49,089 nt of DNA from Hyphochytrium catenoides (lineage: Eukaryota > Protista > Hyphochytriomycota), in the NCBI GenBank assembly GCA_900088475.1, contig FLMG01001656.1, positions 1 to 49,089 of the forward strand. Direction: 5' to 3'. Shown piece after piece: positions 3,088-29,297 of this stretch. Made by a program: the position numbers and the translations under genes. The notes under the pieces were generated by a model that did no database searches, was not told the DNA's origin, and saw only the letters and a program-made list of their open reading frames with translations. How positions within the stretch are numbered: the first letter of the stretch is position 1; every line of letters begins with the position of its first letter.

Positions 3088-4521
3088 TTACACCTTGTTG
3101 CTATTGGCTGCGGCCACAGCAGCAGAGTCAAGAGACTCGCGTACGAGGGTGATCTGGTTTGCTTGGAACTCATCTTTGACGAAGAGAGCGGCTCCAGTAG
3201 CCAGAGTCCATGAAATGGCGCACATGAGGAAGAGATACTTAGAAGCACCAGCCTCCTGAAGAGAAGAGTTGGTGACGATGACAATAACTTGGGGAATAAC
3301 GATGAAGAGGTTGAGCACTCCGAATTGGACACCAATGTCGTGCTCCATATTGGACTCAGAACGCTGGTCGCCACCAATAAGAGCAAATGGGAAGGCGTTG
3401 ATGGCACTCTGAGGTACAGCGATGAAAGACATAGTAATGCAAGCCAATGTAGGCTTTCCGGTAGCAGAGGACAAGTTGATATACATAAGAACAGCTCCAA
3501 CAGCAAGCATAGCAGAATAGATGAACTTAATGCGCCTCAAAAGACATGCATGACCAGAGCCATAGCGAGACCGAGAAACGATCTGGAGTCCATTCGAAAC
3601 AAGGTCAATACGGTCGTTGCTCTCATAACCGTCAAGGTTACCCTTCAGCTTGCCAGGTTTTTCCAAGTCCGGTACTGGACTATAGACAAGTTCAGCCCAC
3701 CAGGTAGATTTGAATGTCCACAAGCAGAAGAGAGAGAACCAAGAGAAGAACTGAACAACAGCAACGCGCTGGAGGCCGACGGGCATGTGTCTGACAGCAC
3801 CGAAGACAGTGGTGAACGGCCCGCATAAGGTTGGGTTTCGCCAAAACTCAGGGCGGATGAACTGCTCCTCCATAGCGAGGAAGCAGGAGAAAGATAAGAG
3901 GACAAAGTTGATACCAAGCGCAATGGAGATGACTTCAAACACCTTGTTTGGTTTATCATCGCCAAACGGAAGCATTACTGCGGAGGCAAGCAGACCACCT
4001 AGGCCCTGAAAGCCCACAGCGAGTAACTGGCCTACACTTTGCTGCTTGGTTGAGCTCAGATCGGAAATCAGCGCTCTCACAGGCGTTCGCAGAACGTTGA
4101 TTGTGGCATCCATACCGATAAACATGATAAGGGCAAAGACCTGGGCTGCGGTACCGGAGAAAATGTGGCCTGCAGCGCCAAAGAGGAAGGCGCAGATAGT
4201 CAATGAGAGAAGGCCACCCATCATAAAGGGACGACGACGACCGAACCTGCTCTCACATCTATCAGATGCTGCACCAACAAGTGGTGCTACAAAGAAACCC
4301 GTAATGGGTCCCCAGATCCATGTCAAAGATGCAAGGCCAGCAGACATGCCAAGACCCTTCTCCATGTACGGCTGCGTGACGGAGAAGTTGGTCCCCCACA
4401 GCATTTGAATACCAATCCATGCTGAGGCCACGGCAGCTAACCTCCAGAGAGGATAGTCCACTTCCTCTTGTTCGCCGTTAGGCTTCTCGCGTTGTTCCAG
4501 GTAGGCGGTGGTTGGAGCCAT
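3088..4521 (-). CDS. Sucrose/maltose:H+ symporter-like MFS transporter (GPH family, SUT/SLC45-like); intronless, possibly decaying
   Basis: GIQMLWG, WIWGPITGFFVAPLVGAASDRCESRFGRRRPF, TPVRALISDL, VQFFSWFSLF and GVQFGVLNLFIVIPQ are SUT/SLC45 hallmarks. The likely start is acaATGg at 4521 (MAPTT..), although the ORF is open to 4791. TM8 looks frameshifted (see findings). Confidence 0.88.
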   Translation of the reverse strand: MAPTTAYLEQREKPNGEQEEVDYPLWRLAAVASAWIGIQMLWGTNFSVTQPYMEKGLGMSAGLASLTWIWGPITGFFVAPLVGAASDRCESRFGRRRPFMMGGLLSLTICAFLFGAAGHIFSGTAAQVFALIMFIGMDATINVLRTPVRALISDLSSTKQQSVGQLLAVGFQGLGGLLASAVMLPFGDDKPNKVFEVISIALGINFVLLSFSCFLAMEEQFIRPEFWRNPTLCGPFTTVFGAVRHMPVGLQRVAVVQFFSWFSLFCLWTFKSTWWAELVYSPVPDLEKPGKLKGNLDGYESNDRIDLVSNGLQIVSRSRYGSGHACLLRRIKFIYSAMLAVGAVLMYINLSSATGKPTLACITMSFIAVPQSAINAFPFALIGGDQRSESNMEHDIGVQFGVLNLFIVIPQVIVIVTNSSLQEAGASKYLFLMCAISWTLATGAALFVKDEFQANQITLVRESLDSAAVAAANSNKV

Positions 4522-7207
4522 TGTAGCTACTCTGAAAAGTGTGGCGCAGTCGGAAGCAGCCTGGAGGCTTCTTACTTTGGTGAGGCTTGTGGTGTAGCCG
4601 AGAGGTTTGACTGTGAGACTGTTGAGACAAGTGGCATCACCCGCCTCACGGCTAGCCAGCAGTGATGGAACAGTATAAGAAGGTAAGGACCCATCCATAG
4701 CAGCTAGCGGCAGGGAAGGAGTGAGATACGTCATCACGGCCAAGACTCTGGATATGGGAGCATCATCTCTTAAGGTTATATTGTAGTCCATTAATACTCG
4801 GAGGAAGGCTTTAGCAAGAAGTGCCGGTCGGGGAAACGCAGGACCACTTCGGGAGCCATCCCTGGTCGTAATGAAGAAAAATCAGGCGATCATGATGGAA
4901 GGGAAGAAAGAACAGCTCTGCTGTAGTGGTGGTCAGTGGTCATCTCATGTCCTTGAACCACCACAAAAATCATGATGAAGAGTGGTGATAATGACCATCG
5001 TTGGGTGGTGGTAAAAAGTTAACACTCTCTGAAGTAAGATTTGTGTCCAATGCTGGTTGCCCTTCGCACACCAGAGAACAATCCGAGGAGCTATACTTCA
5101 ACTAGAAACAGAGAGAGTGACCAAAGGCCACTAGACCTTGAAGATAAAGAACAGGAGAAGAAGAGAAAATAAGTAGGAGATAGACGAAGATTACTACGAA
5201 GGAATTGCCCATGGGAGAAGGCCCAGGTCGGTCCCTCCTCGCTGGTGGTGCCACTTATTTTTTATCATGCAAGTGAAACAGACGAGGTGACACTTAACTG
5301 CTTGAGGTCTAGACAAGAGGAGTGTTGTGAGTACCTTGAAGAAAGAAAATTCGGAGTTGATAGAGGAGACAAAGGGCAGCGCTAGAGAGAGGAGTAAGAT
5401 AATCATGAGTTGATGCTCTATACTTTTAGCTCATAATTATAATAGGATGAGGGCCAGCAGGGAACACACCGATCGGACCTTCACTCTGTGCCGCGAGTAG
5501 GGATGGCGACTACGCACTACTGCCACCTCCCACTACTCCACATTGTCTAGCACTTCATACAGCAATCCGCGCATACTTTCCTTTAGGACAAGAAGAGAAG
5601 AGCGGCGAGTGGCCAGCTTTGCACGGCATCCGGCCCTGCAAGGCCGCATCCTACCCCCTTCCCAAGCCCCTCCCTTCCTACCCAGTCTCTTGACCCGCTA
5701 ATCAGAAAGGCTTCTTCGGCTGGCTGGGTTGCTGGTGTATGTAGAGCGCATTTTGGACTATTCTCTCAAGTATCCACACTGCTGCTGGTTGTGAAGGATA
5801 TATTTTTTTGTGTTTACTGCTGGGTGGGTGTCGTACGGGTCCAATAATGAATGTGAAGCCTACTGTCTGATAGCAGATGAGAACACACCCTCCCCTCTGC
5901 AGTCTCTGGGGTGACTGCTGATAATGGCAAACAACTTTGATCCTGATGGTGCTAGGTTCTGGGGCTTGGAGCTGGCTGCTGTCCGGACAACTAATAAAAG
6001 GAACATAAGCAGAGTTCTGGACAGTCAGAAGGTGAAAAACAGGGTGTCATCGCCACATGAAGTCAGCACCGTGCCTCCGTTCTTGAAGATGAGGTACTCA
6101 AAAATTTCTATAAATAACAGGAGGAGGAAGAAGCAACTTCAAGCGCCTTTCTTATCGCTTCCCCGCTGAGCAAGAGGAAATAATAGCTCCGCACTAACCT
6201 CAAGTTGGAACGACAATGCCCGAGGAAGAACTTCCGATCTACGATAATCATACCTACTCTAATATTATAACTCTTTCTTGTCAATCATCAAATAGCCACG
6301 ACGTCATCACAGCACTATCGCGAGAATCACCTTCTCCTCAGACCCAGACAAAAGCGAGTCATCACAACCTCCAGTCGGCATTGGCGGACTCGGAGCAGCA
6401 AGACGACAAAAGAACGGTACATGCTCCAACAAGTGGAAACAACAATGACCGCGAAAGGCACGCTGTCACATCATCTAACCTTTCTACGCCATCATCCACC
6501 ACGCCGCCTTACCTTCTTGTTACTATAGCCATGAGTGTTGGCGTCTCTCAGCCTCAATTAGAAAATATTTCTATGGATCATAGGAATCTTTGTCCGTTTA
6601 TATTAGGGTACAATCACACTGCCAGTTAAGAGGTCCTAGTACTTATATTGGGAAAGACTTTTTCCTCTGCTTGCATGATATGTAATGAGAGGAAACTCGC
6701 GAACAGAAGCTGATAAATTTCGCCCAGCGAAGGTTCACTTCCTCGCGTTACTTTTTTCTCACGTCTACTAGAATCCAATACATTCTCGTGACTGGCTCAT
6801 CTTTCTCTTTCTTGATCTCAACTAGATCATATTAGTTATAAACGCGCGTTCTAAGACACTCATGGAAGGTCTCTTTCTGACTCGTTGAGCTCTATTGTTT
6901 GGAAAGCAGCAATGAGGGCCAACAACTCACAGTTGCTGCTTCCGCATAATTCTGCAACAGCTGAGGGCGAACGCGACAACCGTCAGTCGCTCCTTCGCCG
7001 ACGGAGGTTGTAGTGTTTGGAGTCTGCCGTCATAACTTCCTGGTTGACGCCGTCCTTCTCTCTCCTACGCTAATGGCACGCACAGAGGAAGTCTAAGAAA
7101 GAACCATCCCGCTAACGCGATTAGATGAGTACATATAGCTTGAATACTGTGAAGAAGTAACATACAGATTAACGCCCGGGAAGCGGGGCAATGGCTCATC
7201 CTTTGCT

Positions 7208-10538: not shown

Positions 10539-12151
10539 TGTTTCTTGTCTGTTAGATGATGATGGCGCTTGCTGGTTATTGTTGATGTTGCTGCTGGCTG
10601 GTAAGTTTGGGAATGAGCTACTGGGAGGGACCCTTGCCGCCGGCTCCCGGCTCTGTAGCCCACAGCCAATCTATCTGTTCTCTTCTGAAGAGGGGAAAAG
10701 TCCACAGTATCGACTACAGGCTTGAATTCCTGCAGCAATCTCAGCGCCCCAGAGGAGGGCTTCTTCTCTAAAATACTTAGAAGTTCCTCATTCACAGAAG
10801 AGTCACCGCTGATCAACAGACAGCACATGGGCTCTTTCTTCAAAGGCCGTCTCAAGCCATGCCATGCATGTGCAATCGAGATCTGCTGGCTCCTGTTCCT
10901 ATAATTGGCACCAACAATCTTGATGAAAATAGCCATCACTGACGGACTCACTCACTAGCTCTTCCTCTGGCCCCACGCCGTCTTCCAATCTTACATCGAC
11001 TGTCGATCGGAGCTTCATCTGTCTCCTTTTGATGACAGATGACAGGAAGCTTTTGCTGCGTTGCTAGGCAAACCAGGCGGAGATGGTGATTTGTTTGCTT
11101 GTATTGATAATTGATAATAAGAGAGCCTGCTTATATGCTGCTTATTACACTCCTACCTAAGTAATTATTACTCGAGGAGTTTAGGATATAATAGAACAAG
11201 TTCAAAAAGAGACGAAAATAGCAGTGAACAAAGTCATTCCAACCACGATTCAAACACACAAAATAGGGTGAGATGTTCTATCCCAAACTCTAAATCGCGC
11301 GTAGAGTACAACAAGTAGACCGAGAAGGACTAAATAAAAATGTATTTTTAGAACAGCTACACCTTTTTCTAGCCTACAGTGGTCTATCTTTATCATCTCT
11401 GTGTGATAAAATAGCCCCAAGCCTAGCCACAGTGGTTTTAGGTAGTCCAAGAATAGAACGTCGTCATTGTCTTTTAGGTGTGATCCTGCTTGTTATTATC
11501 AGGGTAGATCTAGGAACTCTACCTCGAGGCGTACCTATTGCTTGTTGCTGGGTAGCGATGCAGAACCTCCTCTACTTCTACTTGTACGACTCCACCTCCA
11601 TTTCACGTCTGCATCTCATCATAGTTCTGGCGTGCCTCTCAGGTTCGCACGAGTACCTGTAGCTCTGGAAAGTGGTTGGAAACACAGCAAAAAAGCAAAA
11701 ACATGATGGAAAATGTCCTTCACAAATTTGTAGAGATGTTCATTTGAGACGGACGCTGCGGGACGTGTTTGCTGTAGTTGCTTGTACGACAGGTTCTGTC
11801 ATAAAGACGGGCAAGGCAGAGGCTGGCAGGGTCCCTGCCCCGCCTTGACCCACCGCGTCCCTAGTTCACTAGGGAAGAAGTCTGCATCGTGGAAAGCCTC
11901 CACACTATTTTGTGTGTGCGTGCAGACTTTGCCACCGCACAAAGCCTGCAAAAAGGGCTTGACTTGGCAAGAAGAAGCCCAGGTACCGTGCCTAGGGCCG
12001 CTGCTTTAAAAATATAAGAGAGACGCCAATTTCCTTCGGAGGCTTCACTTCCTTGCAGCCGCTATGCCAGGTCTAAAATGAATTCTGTCAGATCAAAGGC
12101 TCATGCTAGACCGTCCTCGCTCGAAGAGTGAGGGTGGCCAAGGAAAAAAGA

Positions 12152-13484
12152 ATGGAGTTTGATGACGCTGGCTCAAAGCTGACATGGCCCGAATTGCAAA
12201 CGAAGTACCGCCGCTCGCCAGGCTTCAATCTTATGCAGGAGGTGCTTCCTTTCAGTAAGGACCTAAATGTAATAGTGTGGAGCTGGTCTAGAACCTAAAG
12301 ATGTCCACAGAAGGCTTATGGATTGGGCCCCAGATAGCTTGCGGAGATCTGGAGGCACTCAAGAAGCAGAAGATCACGCATATCCTGAGCATGAATGGGA
12401 TTCCCCCTTTCTTCTTGAAACATTTATCGGAGGTCGCAGTGGCAACTCTTACAAGGTTTTGATCTTGAAACGCTAAATCTTTATCTTAACTCACAACACT
12501 AGACACTCAAAGTCACAAGCAAGATTATTGCCATCGAGGATGATGAAGACGAGCCCATTACACCCTTTCTGTCTGAGGTCGGTACGGCAGCTATGCTGTG
12601 AATCGCCCAGTCTTCTCTTGCTCATTCTTGGATTGCTCAGGCGGCAGAATTCATTCATTCTGCCTTTTCCAGCATGGGATCTATTCTTGTCTACTGCACT
12701 GCAGGACGTAGTCGAAGCGCTTCTGCGGTGATCGGCTATATGATAGCCTATCATCGCTACCCCTATGAGCAAGCACTCTTGACGCTAAAGAGGGCTCGAC
12801 CCTTCGTCCAACCAAATCGGGGATTCACGAGAGAGCTACAAGCACTAGAGGTCGGTAAAAGAGCTTGAGGCAATTAACTAATCTCTAAAAATCTCACTTG
12901 CAGACCTCTTTGAGGGTTTCCATTCGGCCCTTCTCAAGGGAGTGCGAGTTATGTAGACTTGAGCGGAAGACGGAATGGTATGAGGAACTGTCACCTGACT
13001 ATGTCATTATCCAGGTACCAGGTACAATAGGTAGCATATATCTGGGGAGGCTTCCTGCTGTGCTAAGCCCATGCTAGTGTGACCAATGTGACAGTCCAAT
13101 GGCTGTTTCTAGATGGCACGAAATGGCACTGAACCCCCATCAAGCTAGAGAAATGGAGCTGGCTTTGAGGCGGTAGGGTTAAGCTTACTATACTCTACTT
13201 ATAGCGCCTCTACAACTGCTGACGAATAGATATATGTTTCCCTCTGCGTGGCTAGCGTCGCGGAGCAAGTGTACAACGGCCAAGAGTTTTATGTGGACAA
13301 GCGTCAACGCTCAATTTCTGATCACCTGCACTGGCACGCCCGCTCTCTCGCCGGTGTACCGCAGCCTCTTCGGCCATACGTCGTAGCCCAGGTATTTATA
13401 ACTGAGACATCAGTCTTTGGTAAGGGACAAACCTATCTAAAACTTTTTTTTGGTTATAGTCCAGGCTCTAGTTTTCATAGGTAA
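12152..13484 (+). CDS. Dual-specificity protein phosphatase fused to a C-terminal CxxC..CxxC..HxHxH HIT-like domain (multi-exon; 3' end uncertain)
   Basis: Spliced translation: MEFDDAG..QE|..EGLWIGP..DLEALKKQKITHILSMNG..IAIEDDEDEPI..|AAEFIHSA..ILVYCTAGRSRSASAVIGYMI..RPFVQPNRGFTRELQALE|TSLR..CELCRLERKTEWY..IIQ|CDQCDSPMAVSRWH..ALR|RVAEQVY..FYVDKRQRSISDHLHWHAR. Introns 12851-12903, 13015-13077 and 13173-13255 are GT-AG and phase-consistent. Confidence 0.85.
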
Positions 13485-13529
13485 GAGAGGTCTCAGTTGG
13501 TCTCGGTTGTCTTTCTTAGACCGCGCAAA

Positions 13530-13690
13530 CCACTTATAAGAGCCTTCCTTCTCCGTGTGACCATACAGAACAAGTGCTGGGCAATACGCAAGAGTGCCTA
13601 ACAATAGAACAGTAATAGACATCACCAGCCTTTTTGACTGGCCTCTTCGGTTACATGCCGTATCGCTAGTATCTAGCGAGTGGTGCAAAA
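13530..13690 (-). repeat. Degenerate tandem duplicate of the last coding exon of the HACD gene
   Basis: 13604-13645 (atagaac..agtaatagacatcaccagcctttttgactggcc) aligns with 13881-13927 (atagaactccataataatagacatcaccagcccttttggccggtcc). 13540-13585 aligns with 13810-13860. Several small deletions are present. Confidence 0.85.
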
Positions 13691-13773
13691 TTCTTTGTTA
13701 AGGAGTGATACTTCTATCTAAGACCCTCTCTACGTCATAGTCCAACTTCCAGGTCTGATAGCTACGAGAGATC

Positions 13774-14616
13774 TCACTTTGTCTTTTTCGACTGCGCAGC
13801 CCCACTAAGCGCCTTCTTTCTCTGCTTGACCATGTGACGGAACAAGTGTTGGGCAATAAGCAAAAGCACTACGTTGCCTAATAGAACTCCATAATAATAG
13901 ACATCACCAGCCCTTTTGGCCGGTCCAAGGCACTGATAAATGACGCCAAACTCCCCAGCGAAGCCTAGCGGGTAGAGGACGTAAAAGGCACTGTACCTAA
14001 ATTTCATAGAACGTCAAGTAAGAGCTCGAAAACCGGGGCAGCCCAAGAGCTTTGAAGTGCATGTACCTGAGCCATTCTAGACCCTTGAAGCGGTACTTGG
14101 CTATTACATTGAGGGCATAGTATGGGTAACGGATGGTTTCGGTGATACCATAGGCGCTTAGGAGGAGAACAAGGATCCAATGACTTTCTTGAGTCGCGAA
14201 CTCCGCCTTATCGCGAGCAAGCCATAGGATAAGTAGTCTTCCGCCCTATAAAACGATTCAGGCAACAGACTTAGCTGCTGCCGTGCTGTGCAAATTGCAG
14301 ATTAGAGTTTTACCTGCTGCAGGAATATGGGTAGTAGTGAAGTAGGTGTGACGCCTACTACGGTGTGAAAGAGCTCCAGTAGAAGGGCCACGCACTGTGT
14401 GTACCAGGCGATGTCTAGGGCCTATGATAGTTTGCGGTCATTTTTGAAGCTCTTCGTCATCAGGAATCGCATTTTGCAACTTACAGTCTTAGCTGCCGGC
14501 TGCGGGTTATGATATCTGGTCTCACCGAGTCCCCAAAAGAGGAAGGCAACAGATGCAAGCCAACCCAAGAATTGGGTGCAGCAGTAAGTGAAGAGGTACA
14601 CCTGGCGAAGACCCAT
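13774..14616 (-). CDS. PHS1: Very-long-chain 3-hydroxyacyl-CoA dehydratase (HACD/PTPLA/PHS1), 4 exons
   Basis: YLFTYCCTQFLGW; Q..ALLELFHTVVGVTPT; GGRLLILW; AYGITETIRYPYYAL; WLRYSAFYVLYPLGFAGE (catalytic Tyr/Glu); HM.KQRKK; C-terminal di-lysine ER retrieval signal (KKTK). Three GT-AG introns. Confidence 0.93.
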
Positions 14617-27280: not shown

Positions 27281-29297
27281 CTACTTCTCAATGCAGTGAT
27301 GCATTAGACCCAAAAAGTCCTTGATGGTGATATGCCAGATCACCTGTACCGCCACGTTTGCCACAATAAGCCTGACAAGGAGAAAAGAAGGCGCATAAGT
27401 ACTTGAAAAGCGCTGGAGGAAGAAGGATGGCTACAAAAGACAGCATTGAGACGAGGTGCAGCAGCGCCCGCGGAGAAGACAGGTAGTGGGCCAAGTAAGT
27501 GATCACCACGCAAGGAAGATAGCAGTTGATTTTTGCGGCAAAGGGCGTCAATTTCTCACCATATGACAATCCATTCCAACCGCACACCATGCCGTTGCTG
27601 CACCTGATTGTTTAGCACGCCTAGCAGTTCCTTCAGGACATCCAGCTTAGCATTCAGCAGGTCTACACGGCTATGTACCTCCAGGTACAGCATTAGGGTC
27701 TTGTAAAGCGGCAACCACTCATCTGATTCCCAGAAGAAGTCTGGCTCATCAAGAATGTCTGAGTTCAGATTGATGTCTGCCCGCTCTAGGAATATCTTCC
27801 CAATCATTTTTGACAGGTCTTTCTGAGAGAGCTTCCTCATGATCTTATCCATGTTAACTGGGATGCCACGATATTCTTCAATTACATCCTCAACCCTCGA
27901 CTCGAACATGTCTAGTTTGACACTCTGAGCCATGGCGAAGGATAGGGAGAGCTTTTCCCGTGGATCCACGGTGATCAATGTTATTACGTCGTGCCGAACT
28001 CTGCTTCTGTCTCCATAACAGAAAAGCATGTCATCGCTCTCAGGATGACTTGTTTTCTCGGTTGCAAAGTCCAGAGCCGTCCTTAGGTGGTCCTGCTCCT
28101 CCTCTTCCGATGTCGCCCAAAAGACGACGCAACCCCAATTGAAAAAGAAGATGTCCCTTCGAGTCCACAGGCTCACCTGTTCTTCTCCCTCAGGGACTAG
28201 ACTTACATGCACCGCACCCACATACAGATTGATTTCGCAGCTGAGTGAAGGAAGAAAGGGAAAGAGCTTATTTAAACAGGCAAATAGCGGGTAATAGGTT
28301 GTGAGAGAGACGCACCTCCTCCCCTCGCTGCCAAAGTCGCCAGGCAAGCGAGAGCCGCCCGTTAGACGGATCCACTTGGCTAAGCGAAGGATATCTAGGG
28401 CACTCGAGATGCAATAAGCAGCCACTCTCATCTCCGGAAGCCCACTAGTGAACGCAATCTCAGCTGGTAAAGGCGATTCATAGGGCTTAGAATAGTCCCG
28501 AGCCCTGACTCTCTTCCCTACCCTTGGCCCCCCGGTGGTCTTGGGACCTCTCCCGACCCATTTCTTTAAACCGGCGTACCGTCCAGGTTGGTCGGGACGG
28601 TGATCTCGGTAGCCCACAGGACTCTGCGCTCTATGAGCCTCATAGGCGGCCTTAGTGTCTAGGGGTGGAGACTGTGGTCTTTCAGTGCCTTCCTGATGCT
28701 TATCTCGGAACCGTCCGCGGCGAAGCCTCGTAACTTCTGAGTCCGAAAAAGGATAATCTCTAGGGGAATGAGCTACCTCTTCTTCGTAGGCTTCATAGTA
28801 GGTTGGACCATTAGGCTGCTGCTGTTCTGTTTGATACAGTTGAGGGCTTGAAAGCTCTTGGGTGCGTGGCGACGCATGAAGCTTCGGGTAGTCCGCGCCA
28901 CCACTGCCTCTCCTGCCGTTGGCCTGGCCAGGGGCCTCTGAATCAGTGGACTCAAAGTCCATGATAACCTTTAGAGCTCTTTGTATCGCTGCTGCACGCT
29001 CATCATGCATGTAAGGGGTGATAAAATCCCATGTGCTCGACCTGCCTGAGCTATCGCTAAGAAGCTCCTCAAAATCCCCTGACAGAGGAAGAATGAAAGC
29101 TAGAACTCCCGCTATATACCTAATCACTCACTGGCCCTAATCACACTTACTGCCCTGTGAGACACTTCTTGCTGCTTCTGGTTTCTTCTCCTGAGCCAGT
29201 TACGGATCTTCTCTACACTGTGCCAAGAGTCATCAGCAGCACAAGCAGCGTAATAAGGCAGGAGCGAGACGGCAACCAAGGTCCTTGCTGGCAGCAT
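27281..29297 (-). CDS. RMD1: RMD1/Sif2 family protein (DUF155), paralogue B; 5' end uncertain
   Basis: Same DUF155 motifs as paralogue A and the same two phase-2 intron positions (GR|S and IW|L). The last exon WLIVANVAVQVIWHITIKDFLGLMHHCIEK* ends at 27281. A possible first exon is MLPARTLV.. (ATG 29297); otherwise an internal Met. Confidence 0.9.

What the first reader, a model, noticed from the sequence alone, without database searches (positions are those of the whole stretch)
12152..13484. Dual-specificity phosphatase fused to a putative Zn-binding HIT-like (HxHxH) nucleotide hydrolase domain
Seen: the DSP (intact CX5R: CTAGRSR, with Tyr rather than the usual His before Cys) continues through three phase-matched GT-AG introns into CELC..R.TEW....IIQCDQC..PMAV.R.H....E....L..VA...Y....FYVD..QR.I.DHLHWHAR. 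The ORF track hides this domain because it is split over three exons. Known: His-x-His-x-His is the histidine-triad signature of nucleotide hydrolases/transferases, and an N-terminal CxxC is typical of Zn-binding HINT-like members. Inference: this compact variant with a second CxxC resembles small stand-alone uncharacterised prokaryotic proteins as I recall them, and I know of no characterised DSP-HIT fusion. It could couple dephosphorylation with de-AMPylation/de-nucleotidylation of protein or RNA ends, or act as a nucleotide-sensing phosphatase.
Basis: partly seen in the sequence, partly recalled or inferred. Interest (0 to 1): 0.85.

Follow-up and report, generated by a model that had tools for sequence, protein, structure and literature searches.

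The report
Phosphatase fused to miniature HIT domain
This is one real eight-exon gene that joins a dual-specificity phosphatase to a small, uncatalogued zinc-and-histidine-triad domain otherwise found as stand-alone proteins of uncultured phages, and it ends in a peroxisome-import signal; the combination appears undescribed.

Summary
It is one + strand gene of 8 exons (12152-13471, 289 aa, all introns GT-AG, 53-83 nt).

- **Gene model.** The spliced product aligns collinearly, across six of its seven junctions (all but the last), with an intronless transcript-like environmental contig (P0052, 42% identity).
- **Conservation of the fusion.** At least five other eukaryote-type sequences carry it. 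One is a GC-rich genomic contig with an intron in a different place; another is an unnamed AlphaFold DB entry.
- **The C-terminal domain.** About 90 aa, with CxLC, CxxC-x2-PM, H and DHLHWHAR. It matches nothing in Pfam, NCBIfam or PHROGs.
- **Its family.** More than 100 mostly stand-alone proteins of 85-115 aa: 38 IMG/VR viral contigs (T4-like phages, some next to phoH) and none in 185,579 GTDB species genomes.
- **Its fold.** The AlphaFold model (pLDDT 89) is a HIT fold (VIA Z 10.5; the top 50 PDB hits are all HIT proteins), with the triad in register.

Five of eight eukaryotic relatives end in canonical PTS1 tripeptides against 1 of 58 phage-type ones, so it is probably peroxisomal.

No RNA run was listed, so splicing rests on homology. 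Catalysis, zinc binding and localisation are inferred. I rate it a new variant of a known kind.

The parts
12152..12254 (+). Exon 1 (ATG; aa 1-34, phase 1 at its end)
   Evidence: First ATG of the ORF. The ...LMQEVLP / WIGPQ stretch continues across intron 1 in register with P0052.
12311..12455 (+). Exon 2, N-terminal part of the DSP domain (WIGPQ..ITHILS)
   Evidence: GT-AG intron 12255-12310. Collinear with P0052.
12520..12577 (+). Exon 3, DSP D-loop (IAIEDDEDE; candidate general-acid Asp90/91)
   Evidence: Aligns to the LEDEEDE stretch of P0052 and the LEDAEDE stretch of P0025.
12641..12850 (+). Exon 4, DSP catalytic core. The P-loop VYCTAGRSRS is at 12692-12718 (Cys121, Arg127).
   Evidence: Pfam PF00782 DSPc at E 1.8e-16. 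The closest solved DSPs are DUSP19, DUSP26 and DUSP10 (run on the ortholog).
12851..12903 (+). Intron 4 (53 nt, GT..AG), the link between the DSP and the HIT-like domain. If it is retained, a stop (TGA, 12866-12868) follows after 5 codons.
   Evidence: Window ..LQALE|TSLRVS.. matches P0052 ..LMRME|TDLKRS.. without a gap. Stop on retention.
12904..13014 (+). Exon 5: linker helix, first Cys pair (CELC, 12943-12954) and HIT strands 1-2
   Evidence: C7 and C10 are conserved in at least 90% of the family.
13078..13172 (+). Exon 6: second Cys pair (CDQC, 13078-13089), the PM motif, invariant His223, and the start of the long helix
   Evidence: C30, C33, P36 and H43 are invariant in 61 sequences.
13256..13391 (+). 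Exon 7: end of the helix, strand 4 (FYVD), QR, and the triad strand DHLHWHAR (13320-13343; His264, His266, His268)
   Evidence: H82, H84, W85, H86, A87 and R88 are invariant. This is the only copy of the motif in the window.
13392..13459 (+). Proposed intron 7 (68 nt, GT..AG, 31% GC, T-rich acceptor tract)
   Evidence: Reading through it adds 30 aa with no homolog. Splicing it gives -SRL, as in P0025, and like the -SKL/-AKL/-ARL ends of the other eukaryotic relatives.
13460..13471 (+). Exon 8 coding part: Ser-Arg-Leu-stop (PTS1-type tripeptide)

Best explanation
**Shown.**
- One gene (12152-13471, 8 exons, 289 aa) encodes a two-domain protein. The N-terminal part (aa ~35-172) is an atypical dual-specificity phosphatase with an intact CX5R loop.
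- The C-terminal part (aa ~180-272) is a miniature domain of about 90 aa. It belongs to a family absent from Pfam, NCBIfam and PHROGs, and it adopts the HIT (histidine-triad) alpha+beta fold.
- The same two-domain protein occurs in several other eukaryotes. Their domains form one branch, separate from the stand-alone phage-type proteins.

**Inferred.**
- The two Cys pairs (C186/C189 and C210/C213) lie on a short-helix knuckle and on the strand 2-3 hairpin. That hairpin takes the place of the nucleoside-binding 'D-I-S-P' loop of classical HINT. I infer that the four Cys hold a structural zinc.
- The invariant D-H-L-H-W-H-A-R strand, together with His223, forms a HIT-type active site. His266 would attack the alpha-phosphate of a nucleoside-monophosphate conjugate (NMP-X) and form a transient His-NMP intermediate.
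- The C-terminal -SRL sends the protein into the peroxisome matrix through the PTS1/PEX5 route.
- There the Cys-phosphatase and the HIT-like hydrolase would act on the same or successive phosphorylated or nucleotidylated substrates. Examples are adenylates, APS or dinucleoside polyphosphates and their phosphorylated products, or phospho- and AMP-modified proteins. The substrate is not known.
For: **Gene model.**
- Searches give the exons, phases and motif coordinates.
- The exons tile onto intronless homologs.
- The spliced protein aligns with P0052 at 42% identity over aa 21-283, collinear across six of the seven junctions, all but the last.
- DNA contigs of two runs carry no indel in the coding sequence.

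**Conserved fusion.**
- P0052 and P0025.
- L005: a DSP ORF, a ~66-nt intron and then P0151.
- DSP tails stand in front of the domain in P0152, P0154 and P0171.
- AFDB entry A0A1R2CT57 aligns over both domains at 42% identity, E 1.9e-17.

**Family.** 67 hits down to E 2e-28 with no Pfam family. Ten columns are invariant.

**Fold.**
- AF2 model with pLDDT 89.4 and pTM 0.81.
- The Foldseek top 50 in PDB are all HIT proteins.
- VIA-align gives Z up to 10.5 over 87-94 of 96 residues.
- The only PDB sequence hit of the family profile that spans the whole domain is the HIT protein 2oik, end to end and in register (CELC/CELC, HLHWH/HVHWH), although E is only 4.5-5.9. At E 10 or below, one search also listed two collagen-IV chains matching about 23 residues around the second Cys pair.

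**PTS1.**
- Five of eight eukaryotic relatives end in [SAC][KRH][LM], against 1 of 58 phage-type ones. With the window's own model-chosen -SRL counted, it is 6 of 9, Fisher p 6e-6.
- Classical HIT proteins are peroxisomal in plants and in Nannochloropsis (PMC3355810, PMC7710942).
- A plant DSP, MKP1, carries a PTS1-like signal (PMC6255987).

**One eukaryotic branch.** Support 90/81.
Against: - No RNA evidence for this gene: no RNA run was listed.
- The last intron and the -SRL end rest on analogy with relatives, and two fused relatives end in -SYL and -FKI.
- No HIT-clan profile recognises the domain, and the 2oik match is not significant.
- The seventh motif position is Arg, not hydrophobic.
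- The classical nucleoside-binding loop is replaced, so the substrate may not be a nucleotide at all.
- The DSP has Tyr where His normally lowers the pKa of the catalytic Cys.
- The full-length model is poor in its N-terminal half (pLDDT 73 overall), so nothing can be said about how the two domains pack.
Confidence: 0.6

Rival explanations
1. The C-terminal domain is a HIT-derived but non-catalytic metal- or ligand-binding module. Cys4 plus the His cluster would bind one or two metal ions, and the domain would regulate, dimerise or target the phosphatase rather than hydrolyse a nucleotide conjugate.
For: - The classical nucleoside-binding loop is replaced by a CxxC hairpin.
- There is no sequence-profile match to catalytic HIT families.
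- Eight invariant Cys/His residues would fit two metal sites.
- One AFDB relative is auto-named after a zinc-ribbon family (Lar).
Against: - The triad sits in register on the last strand, as in active HITs.
- DHLHWHAR is identical from phages to protists, including a Trp and an Arg that are not metal ligands. That degree of conservation is typical of an active site.
- The stand-alone phage versions have no partner domain to regulate.
Confidence: 0.25
2. The locus mainly produces a DSP-only protein, either by retention of intron 4 (stop at 12866-12868) or from separate transcripts. The fused reading frame would then be a minor or non-existent product in this organism.
For: No RNA run was listed. 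Intron-4 retention gives a tidy stop 5 codons after the DSP domain.
Against: - Exon 5 has no in-frame start codon.
- Phases match at every junction.
- An intronless transcript-like contig from a relative encodes the same fusion.
- Another genome has the fusion with an intron at a different place.
- The domain is under clear constraint: all ten columns that are invariant across the family are kept in the window.
Confidence: 0.07
3. It is a DUSP12/YVH1-type phosphatase, and the Cys/His-rich tail is the known YVH1 zinc-binding domain.
For: The overall layout is similar: a DSP followed by a C-terminal Cys-rich zinc domain. YVH1 and DUSP12 appear among the PDB sequence hits of the DSP part.
Against: - YVH1 and DUSP12 rank low (E 7e-11 and 4e-9, against 1e-16 for DUSP19).
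- The tail folds as HIT, and its top 50 structural matches are all HIT proteins.
- The tail has no sequence match to any PDB chain, YVH1 included.
Confidence: 0.02
4. The tail is a phage-type His-Me (HNH) nuclease or a Lar-like zinc ribbon, not a HIT relative.
For: - Two CxxC pairs plus conserved His residues, and phage provenance.
- Weak Pfam Zn_ribbon_6 hit at E 0.22.
- The 'Lar family' auto-annotation of one AFDB relative.
Against: - The predicted topology is three strands, a long helix and two strands, not beta-beta-alpha-Me.
- The top 50 PDB matches by Foldseek and by VIA-align are all HIT proteins.
Confidence: 0.03

Closest known systems
HINT-type HIT proteins (e.g. PDB 3oxk, 6d6j, human HINT1, E. 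coli HinT) and the HIT protein 2oik
   Same: - Same alpha+beta topology (VIA Z 8.7-10.5, 87-94 of 96 residues aligned).
- H-x-H-x-H on the last strand, in register.
- An N-terminal CxxC, as in the zinc-containing HITs.
- 2oik even shares CELC and H-V-H-W-H.
   Different: - About 20% shorter.
- No significant sequence-profile match.
- A second CxxC replaces the nucleoside-binding loop.
- The motif ends in an invariant W-H-A-R instead of phi-H-phi-phi.
- Found stand-alone in phages and fused to a DSP in eukaryotes.
Peroxisomal HIT1-3 of Arabidopsis and HIT1 of Nannochloropsis
   Same: HIT-fold proteins that carry peroxisomal targeting signals. The plant enzymes hydrolyse adenosine 5'-phosphosulfate in vitro (PMC3355810, PMC7710942).
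   Different: They are classical Pfam-HIT proteins, single-domain and mostly targeted by PTS2. They have no phosphatase fusion.
DUSP12 / YVH1
   Same: A DSP followed by a C-terminal zinc-binding Cys/His-rich domain.
   Different: The tail is an unrelated fold and sequence. The DSP part here is closer to DUSP19, DUSP26 and DUSP10.
NitFhit and aprataxin (HIT domains fused to other modules)
   Same: Precedents for a HIT domain fused to a second enzyme or to a zinc finger. NitFhit (1ems) is among the structural hits, Z 8.9.
   Different: The partners differ: nitrilase in NitFhit, FHA plus C2H2 finger in aprataxin. Their HIT domains are the classical Fhit and aprataxin branches.
Arabidopsis MKP1
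   Same: A dual-specificity phosphatase with a PTS1-like C-terminus, reported to enter peroxisomes under stress (cited in PMC6255987).
   Different: It is a MAPK phosphatase with other domains, no HIT domain and a non-canonical signal.

Membership tests
HIT superfamily | [quoted passage not shown] | tested here: met
   H-L-H-W-H-A-R. The three His are invariant in 61 sequences. The first six positions fit. The seventh is Arg, which is a deviation.
HIT superfamily | HIT alpha+beta fold with the triad on the last strand | tested here: met
   AF2 model of the ortholog's domain has pLDDT 89.4. The Foldseek top 50 are all HIT, TM 0.55-0.72. VIA Z is up to 10.5. This is a predicted structure, not a solved one.
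HIT superfamily | Significant match to a HIT-clan sequence profile (Pfam PF01230, PF11969 and others) | tested here: not met
   No Pfam family at E 10 or below for P0052:240-338, P0025:95-210 or the window exons. Family profile against PDB: 2oik only, at E 4.5-5.9. hhalign against E. coli HinT has probability 0.5%.
HIT superfamily | Nucleotide-binding pocket and covalent His-NMP catalysis | not testable with these tools
The loop that binds the ribose and base in HINT is replaced by CxxC (an inference).
Dual-specificity phosphatase (Pfam DSPc, PF00782) | Profile match above the gathering score | tested here: met
   Exon 4 alone scores 60.6 bits against a cut-off of 33.5. The orthologs score 79-92 bits.
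Dual-specificity phosphatase (Pfam DSPc, PF00782) | C-X5-R P-loop with an upstream general-acid Asp | tested here: met
   C121-TAGRS-R127, with Asp90, Asp91 and Asp93 in the IEDDEDE loop about 30 residues upstream. Which Asp acts as the general acid is inferred.
Dual-specificity phosphatase (Pfam DSPc, PF00782) | His immediately before the catalytic Cys (VHC) | tested here: not met
   It is Tyr120 in the window, in P0052 and in L005, and His in P0025. This is a usual feature rather than a defining one, so membership stands.
DUSP12 / YVH1 | C-terminal YVH1-type zinc-binding domain | tested here: not met
   The tail folds as HIT and has no PDB sequence match. The DSP part ranks DUSP19 first.
PTS1-targeted peroxisomal matrix protein | C-terminal tripeptide of the [SAC][KRH][LM] type | tested here: met
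   -SRL, if intron 13392-13459 is removed. Five of eight eukaryotic relatives carry such an end, against 1 of 58 phage-type proteins. This depends on an intron not verified by RNA.
PTS1-targeted peroxisomal matrix protein | PEX5-dependent import into peroxisomes | not testable with these tools
   Needs localisation of a tagged protein.

The most novel reading that the evidence does not exclude
A phage-borne miniature HIT enzyme was captured once by an ancestor of several protist lineages (or the transfer went the other way). It was welded to a Cys-phosphatase and sent to the peroxisome. This created a two-step enzyme that first removes a nucleotidyl group (His266) and then a phosphoryl group (Cys121) from one class of substrate, a chemistry not known for peroxisomes. 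The stand-alone phage proteins would do the first step on host nucleotide conjugates during infection; some of them are encoded directly after phoH.
Probability: 0.15. Interest if true: 0.8.

Novelty: new variant of a known kind. Interest (0 to 1): 0.62.

Why it matters
- **An uncatalogued family.** It defines a protein family of more than 100 members that Pfam, NCBIfam and PHROGs lack, and shows that the family is a stripped-down HIT fold with an extra Cys pair and an absolutely conserved DHLHWHAR strand.
- **Distribution.** The family links uncultured marine and freshwater T4-like phages with a handful of protists.
- **A testable clue to function.** In the protists the domain is always found behind a dual-specificity phosphatase and usually in front of a PTS1. 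This 'Rosetta-stone' fusion says the two activities belong to one process, probably in peroxisomes.
- **What that points to.** It gives a concrete handle on what the phage proteins do. It also suggests peroxisomal nucleotide or phospho-signalling chemistry that has only been hinted at by the plant peroxisomal HITs and MKP1.

Tried and rejected
- **RNA evidence.** Two run searches returned no RNA run and only DNA contig runs. Laying four runs showed no joints.
- **Searches with single exons.**
  - Pfam gave only DSPc, plus a weak DUF6025 hit that I take as chance.
  - PDB gave nothing meaningful.
  - The word-index protein search with exon 7 gave nothing.
  - The Atlas feature search gave only a lead to HIT, score 0.83.
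- **The one exhaustive HMMER job.** I spent it on DSP exon 4. It found no close ortholog (at most 56% identity), but two of the 150 hits carried the tail.
- **Region search with the P0052 tail** for proteins of 186-591 aa found only itself, because the word index is too coarse.
- **GenBank phages (INPHARED).** tblastn with three family members gave no match, so the family is so far confined to uncultured viral contigs.
- **GTDB species genomes.** 41 pattern matches, none confirmed. The pattern was strict.
- **Other profile libraries and comparisons.** PHROGs and NCBIfam have no family for it. hhalign against E. coli HinT was not significant.
- **Full-length AF2.** The N-terminal half was poor because MAFFT misplaced the DSP-only rows (A3, A4), which I dropped. 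No statement on domain packing is possible.
- **phoH as a general neighbour.** It holds in only 7 of 43 loci, which are 3 lineages.
- **Rejected readings.** The YVH1-type zinc domain and the HNH/Lar readings (see rival explanations).
- The window's own spliced protein was never sent to a database or folding tool, because it has no reference and I did not type it. The ortholog P0052 and the exon references served as proxies, and the spliced sequence was used only in local scripts.
Full report
**1. What is in the sequence**

Reading 11400-14200 and testing splice models locally gives one + strand gene. All seven introns are GT..AG and 53-83 nt long. They are mostly lower in GC than the coding sequence (31-52% against 51%). 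Retaining any of introns 1-6 runs into a stop within 1-20 codons.

| Exon | Coordinates |
|---|---|
| 1 | 12152-12254 |
| 2 | 12311-12455 |
| 3 | 12520-12577 |
| 4 | 12641-12850 |
| 5 | 12904-13014 |
| 6 | 13078-13172 |
| 7 | 13256-13391 |
| 8 | 13460-13471 |

- Exon 4 carries the phosphatase P-loop VYCTAGRSRS (12692-12718) and matches Pfam DSPc at E 1.8e-16.
- Exon 5 has no in-frame Met, so the tail cannot start on its own.

**2. Is the splicing real?**

No RNA run was listed for this gene. The only runs that hold it are DNA contig sets. They carry the introns, show no joints, and have no indel in the coding sequence. They carry three exonic SNPs: T80N, F111L and one synonymous. The gene model therefore rests on comparison with relatives.

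The single exhaustive HMMER search, run with exon 4, found no close ortholog. A local phmmer of the spliced tail against its 150 hits then picked out two proteins. P0052 (338 aa) comes from a 1424-nt intronless JGI contig (L003). P0025 (210 aa) comes from ENA.

- Exons 5, 6 and 7 tile end to end onto the uninterrupted tails of these two proteins (A1).
- The whole spliced protein aligns collinearly with P0052 over aa 21-283 at 42% identity, crossing six of the seven junctions (all but the last). Across the DSP-to-tail junction..LQALE|TSLRVS.. matches ..LMRME|TDLKRS...

The fusion also occurs elsewhere:
- A GC-rich eukaryotic genomic contig (L005) has a DSP ORF, a ~66-nt intron at a different position, and then the tail, ending in -SKL.
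- The fragments P0152, P0154 and P0171 begin with the end of a DSP domain.
- The unnamed AlphaFold DB entry A0A1R2CT57 (224 aa) aligns over both domains at 42% identity, E 1.9e-17.

The fusion is therefore real and conserved.

**3. The last intron and the C-terminus**

A GT at 13392 and a T-rich acceptor ending at 13459 define a 68-nt, 31%-GC intron. Removing it leaves Ser-Arg-Leu-stop.

P0025 also ends in -SRL. Other eukaryote-type relatives end in -SKL, -AKL and -ARL. Leaving the window out, 5 of 8 members of the eukaryotic branch end in [SAC][KRH][LM], against 1 of 58 phage-type proteins. With the window included it is 6 of 9, Fisher p 6e-6. I take the 289-aa, -SRL form as the likely product. 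It would be a PTS1-targeted peroxisomal protein, which is an inference.

There are precedents. Classical HIT proteins are peroxisomal in Arabidopsis and carry a PTS2 in Nannochloropsis (PMC3355810, PMC7710942). Arabidopsis MKP1, a DSP, has a PTS1-like signal (PMC6255987). Other notes of this scan report PTS1-ended proteins in this genome; I did not check them.

**4. What the tail is**

No library has a family for it: Pfam at E 10 or below, NCBIfam and PHROGs. No PDB chain matches it by sequence.

A profile search with A1 found 67 proteins, E down to 2e-28. Most are 85-115 aa and stand-alone, and all lack a Pfam family or a name. In alignments of 45 and 61 members:
- the second Cys pair, a Pro, one His and H-x-H-W-H-A-R are invariant;
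- the first Cys pair is conserved in at least 90%.

Fold evidence:
- AlphaFold on A2 gives a confident model: pLDDT 89.4, pTM 0.81, with a short helix, three strands, a long helix and two strands.
- The 50 best PDB matches by Foldseek are all HIT proteins, TM 0.55-0.72.
- VIA-align gives Z up to 10.5 over 87-94 of 96 residues, again only HIT proteins, including zinc-containing ones and NitFhit.
- In AlphaFold DB the family forms its own tight set (TM about 0.8 and above, E 1e-6 to 1e-9). Canonical HIT proteins begin after a clear gap, at E 3e-3. The ESM Atlas shows the same picture.

By sequence, the only whole-domain PDB hit of the family profile is the HIT protein 2oik. It is not significant (E 4.5-5.9), but it aligns end to end and in register: CELC to CELC, HLHWH to HVHWH. 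The A2 profile also touched two collagen-IV chains over about 23 residues at E 2.3 and 9.2. hhalign against E. coli HinT aligns only the triad.

My verdict is that the tail is a divergent, miniature branch of the HIT superfamily, on the evidence of fold and motif but not of profile. The second CxxC sits in the hairpin that in HINT binds the nucleoside. A Cys4 zinc site and a remodelled substrate pocket are therefore my inferences, not observations.

**5. Where the family lives**

- A scan of IMG/VR found 38 viral loci. The same alignment found no confirmed relative in 185,579 GTDB species genomes, although the pattern used was strict.
- The neighbours are phage genes:
  - T4-type portal, gp13, prohead protease and gp23;
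  - major head, scaffold and tail fibre proteins, radical SAM and 2OG-Fe oxygenase;
  - other virus-like gene arrays.
- In three lineages the gene starts 3 nt after phoH.
- Three queries found nothing in 50,697 GenBank phage records.
- Structure-cluster searches list some bacterial entries (Actinomycetota and MAGs), one of them auto-named 'Lar family'.
- In a maximum-likelihood tree the nine eukaryote-type domains form one side of a branch, support 90/81. This fits a single origin of the fusion. The root, and so the direction of any transfer, is open.

**6. The phosphatase part**

It is a generic atypical DSP. The closest solved relatives are DUSP19, DUSP26 and DUSP10, while YVH1 and DUSP12 rank far lower. 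The CX5R loop and an acidic D-loop are present. Tyr replaces the usual His before the Cys in the window, in P0052 and in L005, but not in P0025.

**7. Mechanism, novelty and limits**

The most likely reading is a bifunctional, probably peroxisomal enzyme. It combines a Cys-phosphatase with a zinc-stabilised mini-HIT that uses His266 to attack a nucleoside-monophosphate conjugate.

The gene model and the fold are shown. Zinc binding, catalysis, substrate and localisation are inferred. The main rival is a non-catalytic metal- or ligand-binding module.

Literature searches found no DSP-HIT fusion, and no large cluster of the fusion exists in the ESM Atlas. I rate it a new variant of a known kind.

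Limit of method: the window's spliced protein has no reference, so I did not send it to any database or folding tool. Orthologs and exon references stood in for it.

Noticed in passing
window 13777-14007 (- strand), and about 13500-13690: The convergent downstream gene is a PTPLA/HACD (3-hydroxyacyl-CoA dehydratase) homolog; its last exon matches Pfam PF04387 at E 4.8e-13. A decayed tandem copy of that last exon lies 272-282 nt further on (87-90% identical blocks), inside the likely 3' UTR of the phosphatase gene.
   Followed up: partly
L013, L015-L019, L026 (IMG/VR), positions about 4230-5270: In three lineages of low-GC T4-like marine phage contigs, the stand-alone mini-HIT gene starts 3 nt after a phoH gene (Pfam PhoH, E 1e-70). 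This looks like a possible functional pair. It is not seen in the other 36 viral loci.
   Followed up: partly
P0176, P0182, P0184 (149 aa): A well-supported subgroup of phage-type members carries an extra N-terminal extension of about 40 aa with its own Cys/His pattern (CYCQFH..H.HW).
   Followed up: no
window 12446, 12665, 12387: Contigs of two other DNA runs of the same organism label differ at three exonic sites: T80N, F111L and one synonymous. They show no indels in the coding sequence, so the gene is intact in several isolates or runs.
   Followed up: partly
window 3088-4791 (-) and 27556-29127 (-): Long single-exon ORFs with Pfam matches: an MFS_2 sugar transporter (E 1e-13) and RMND1/DUF155 (E 4e-44). 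They look like ordinary neighbours.
   Followed up: no
AlphaFold DB entry A0A1R2CT57: A 224-aa unnamed UniProt protein is a compact version of the same DSP plus mini-HIT fusion (42% identity over both domains). The accession series looks like the Stentor coeruleus proteome, but that is from my memory and the tool hid the organism.
   Followed up: partly
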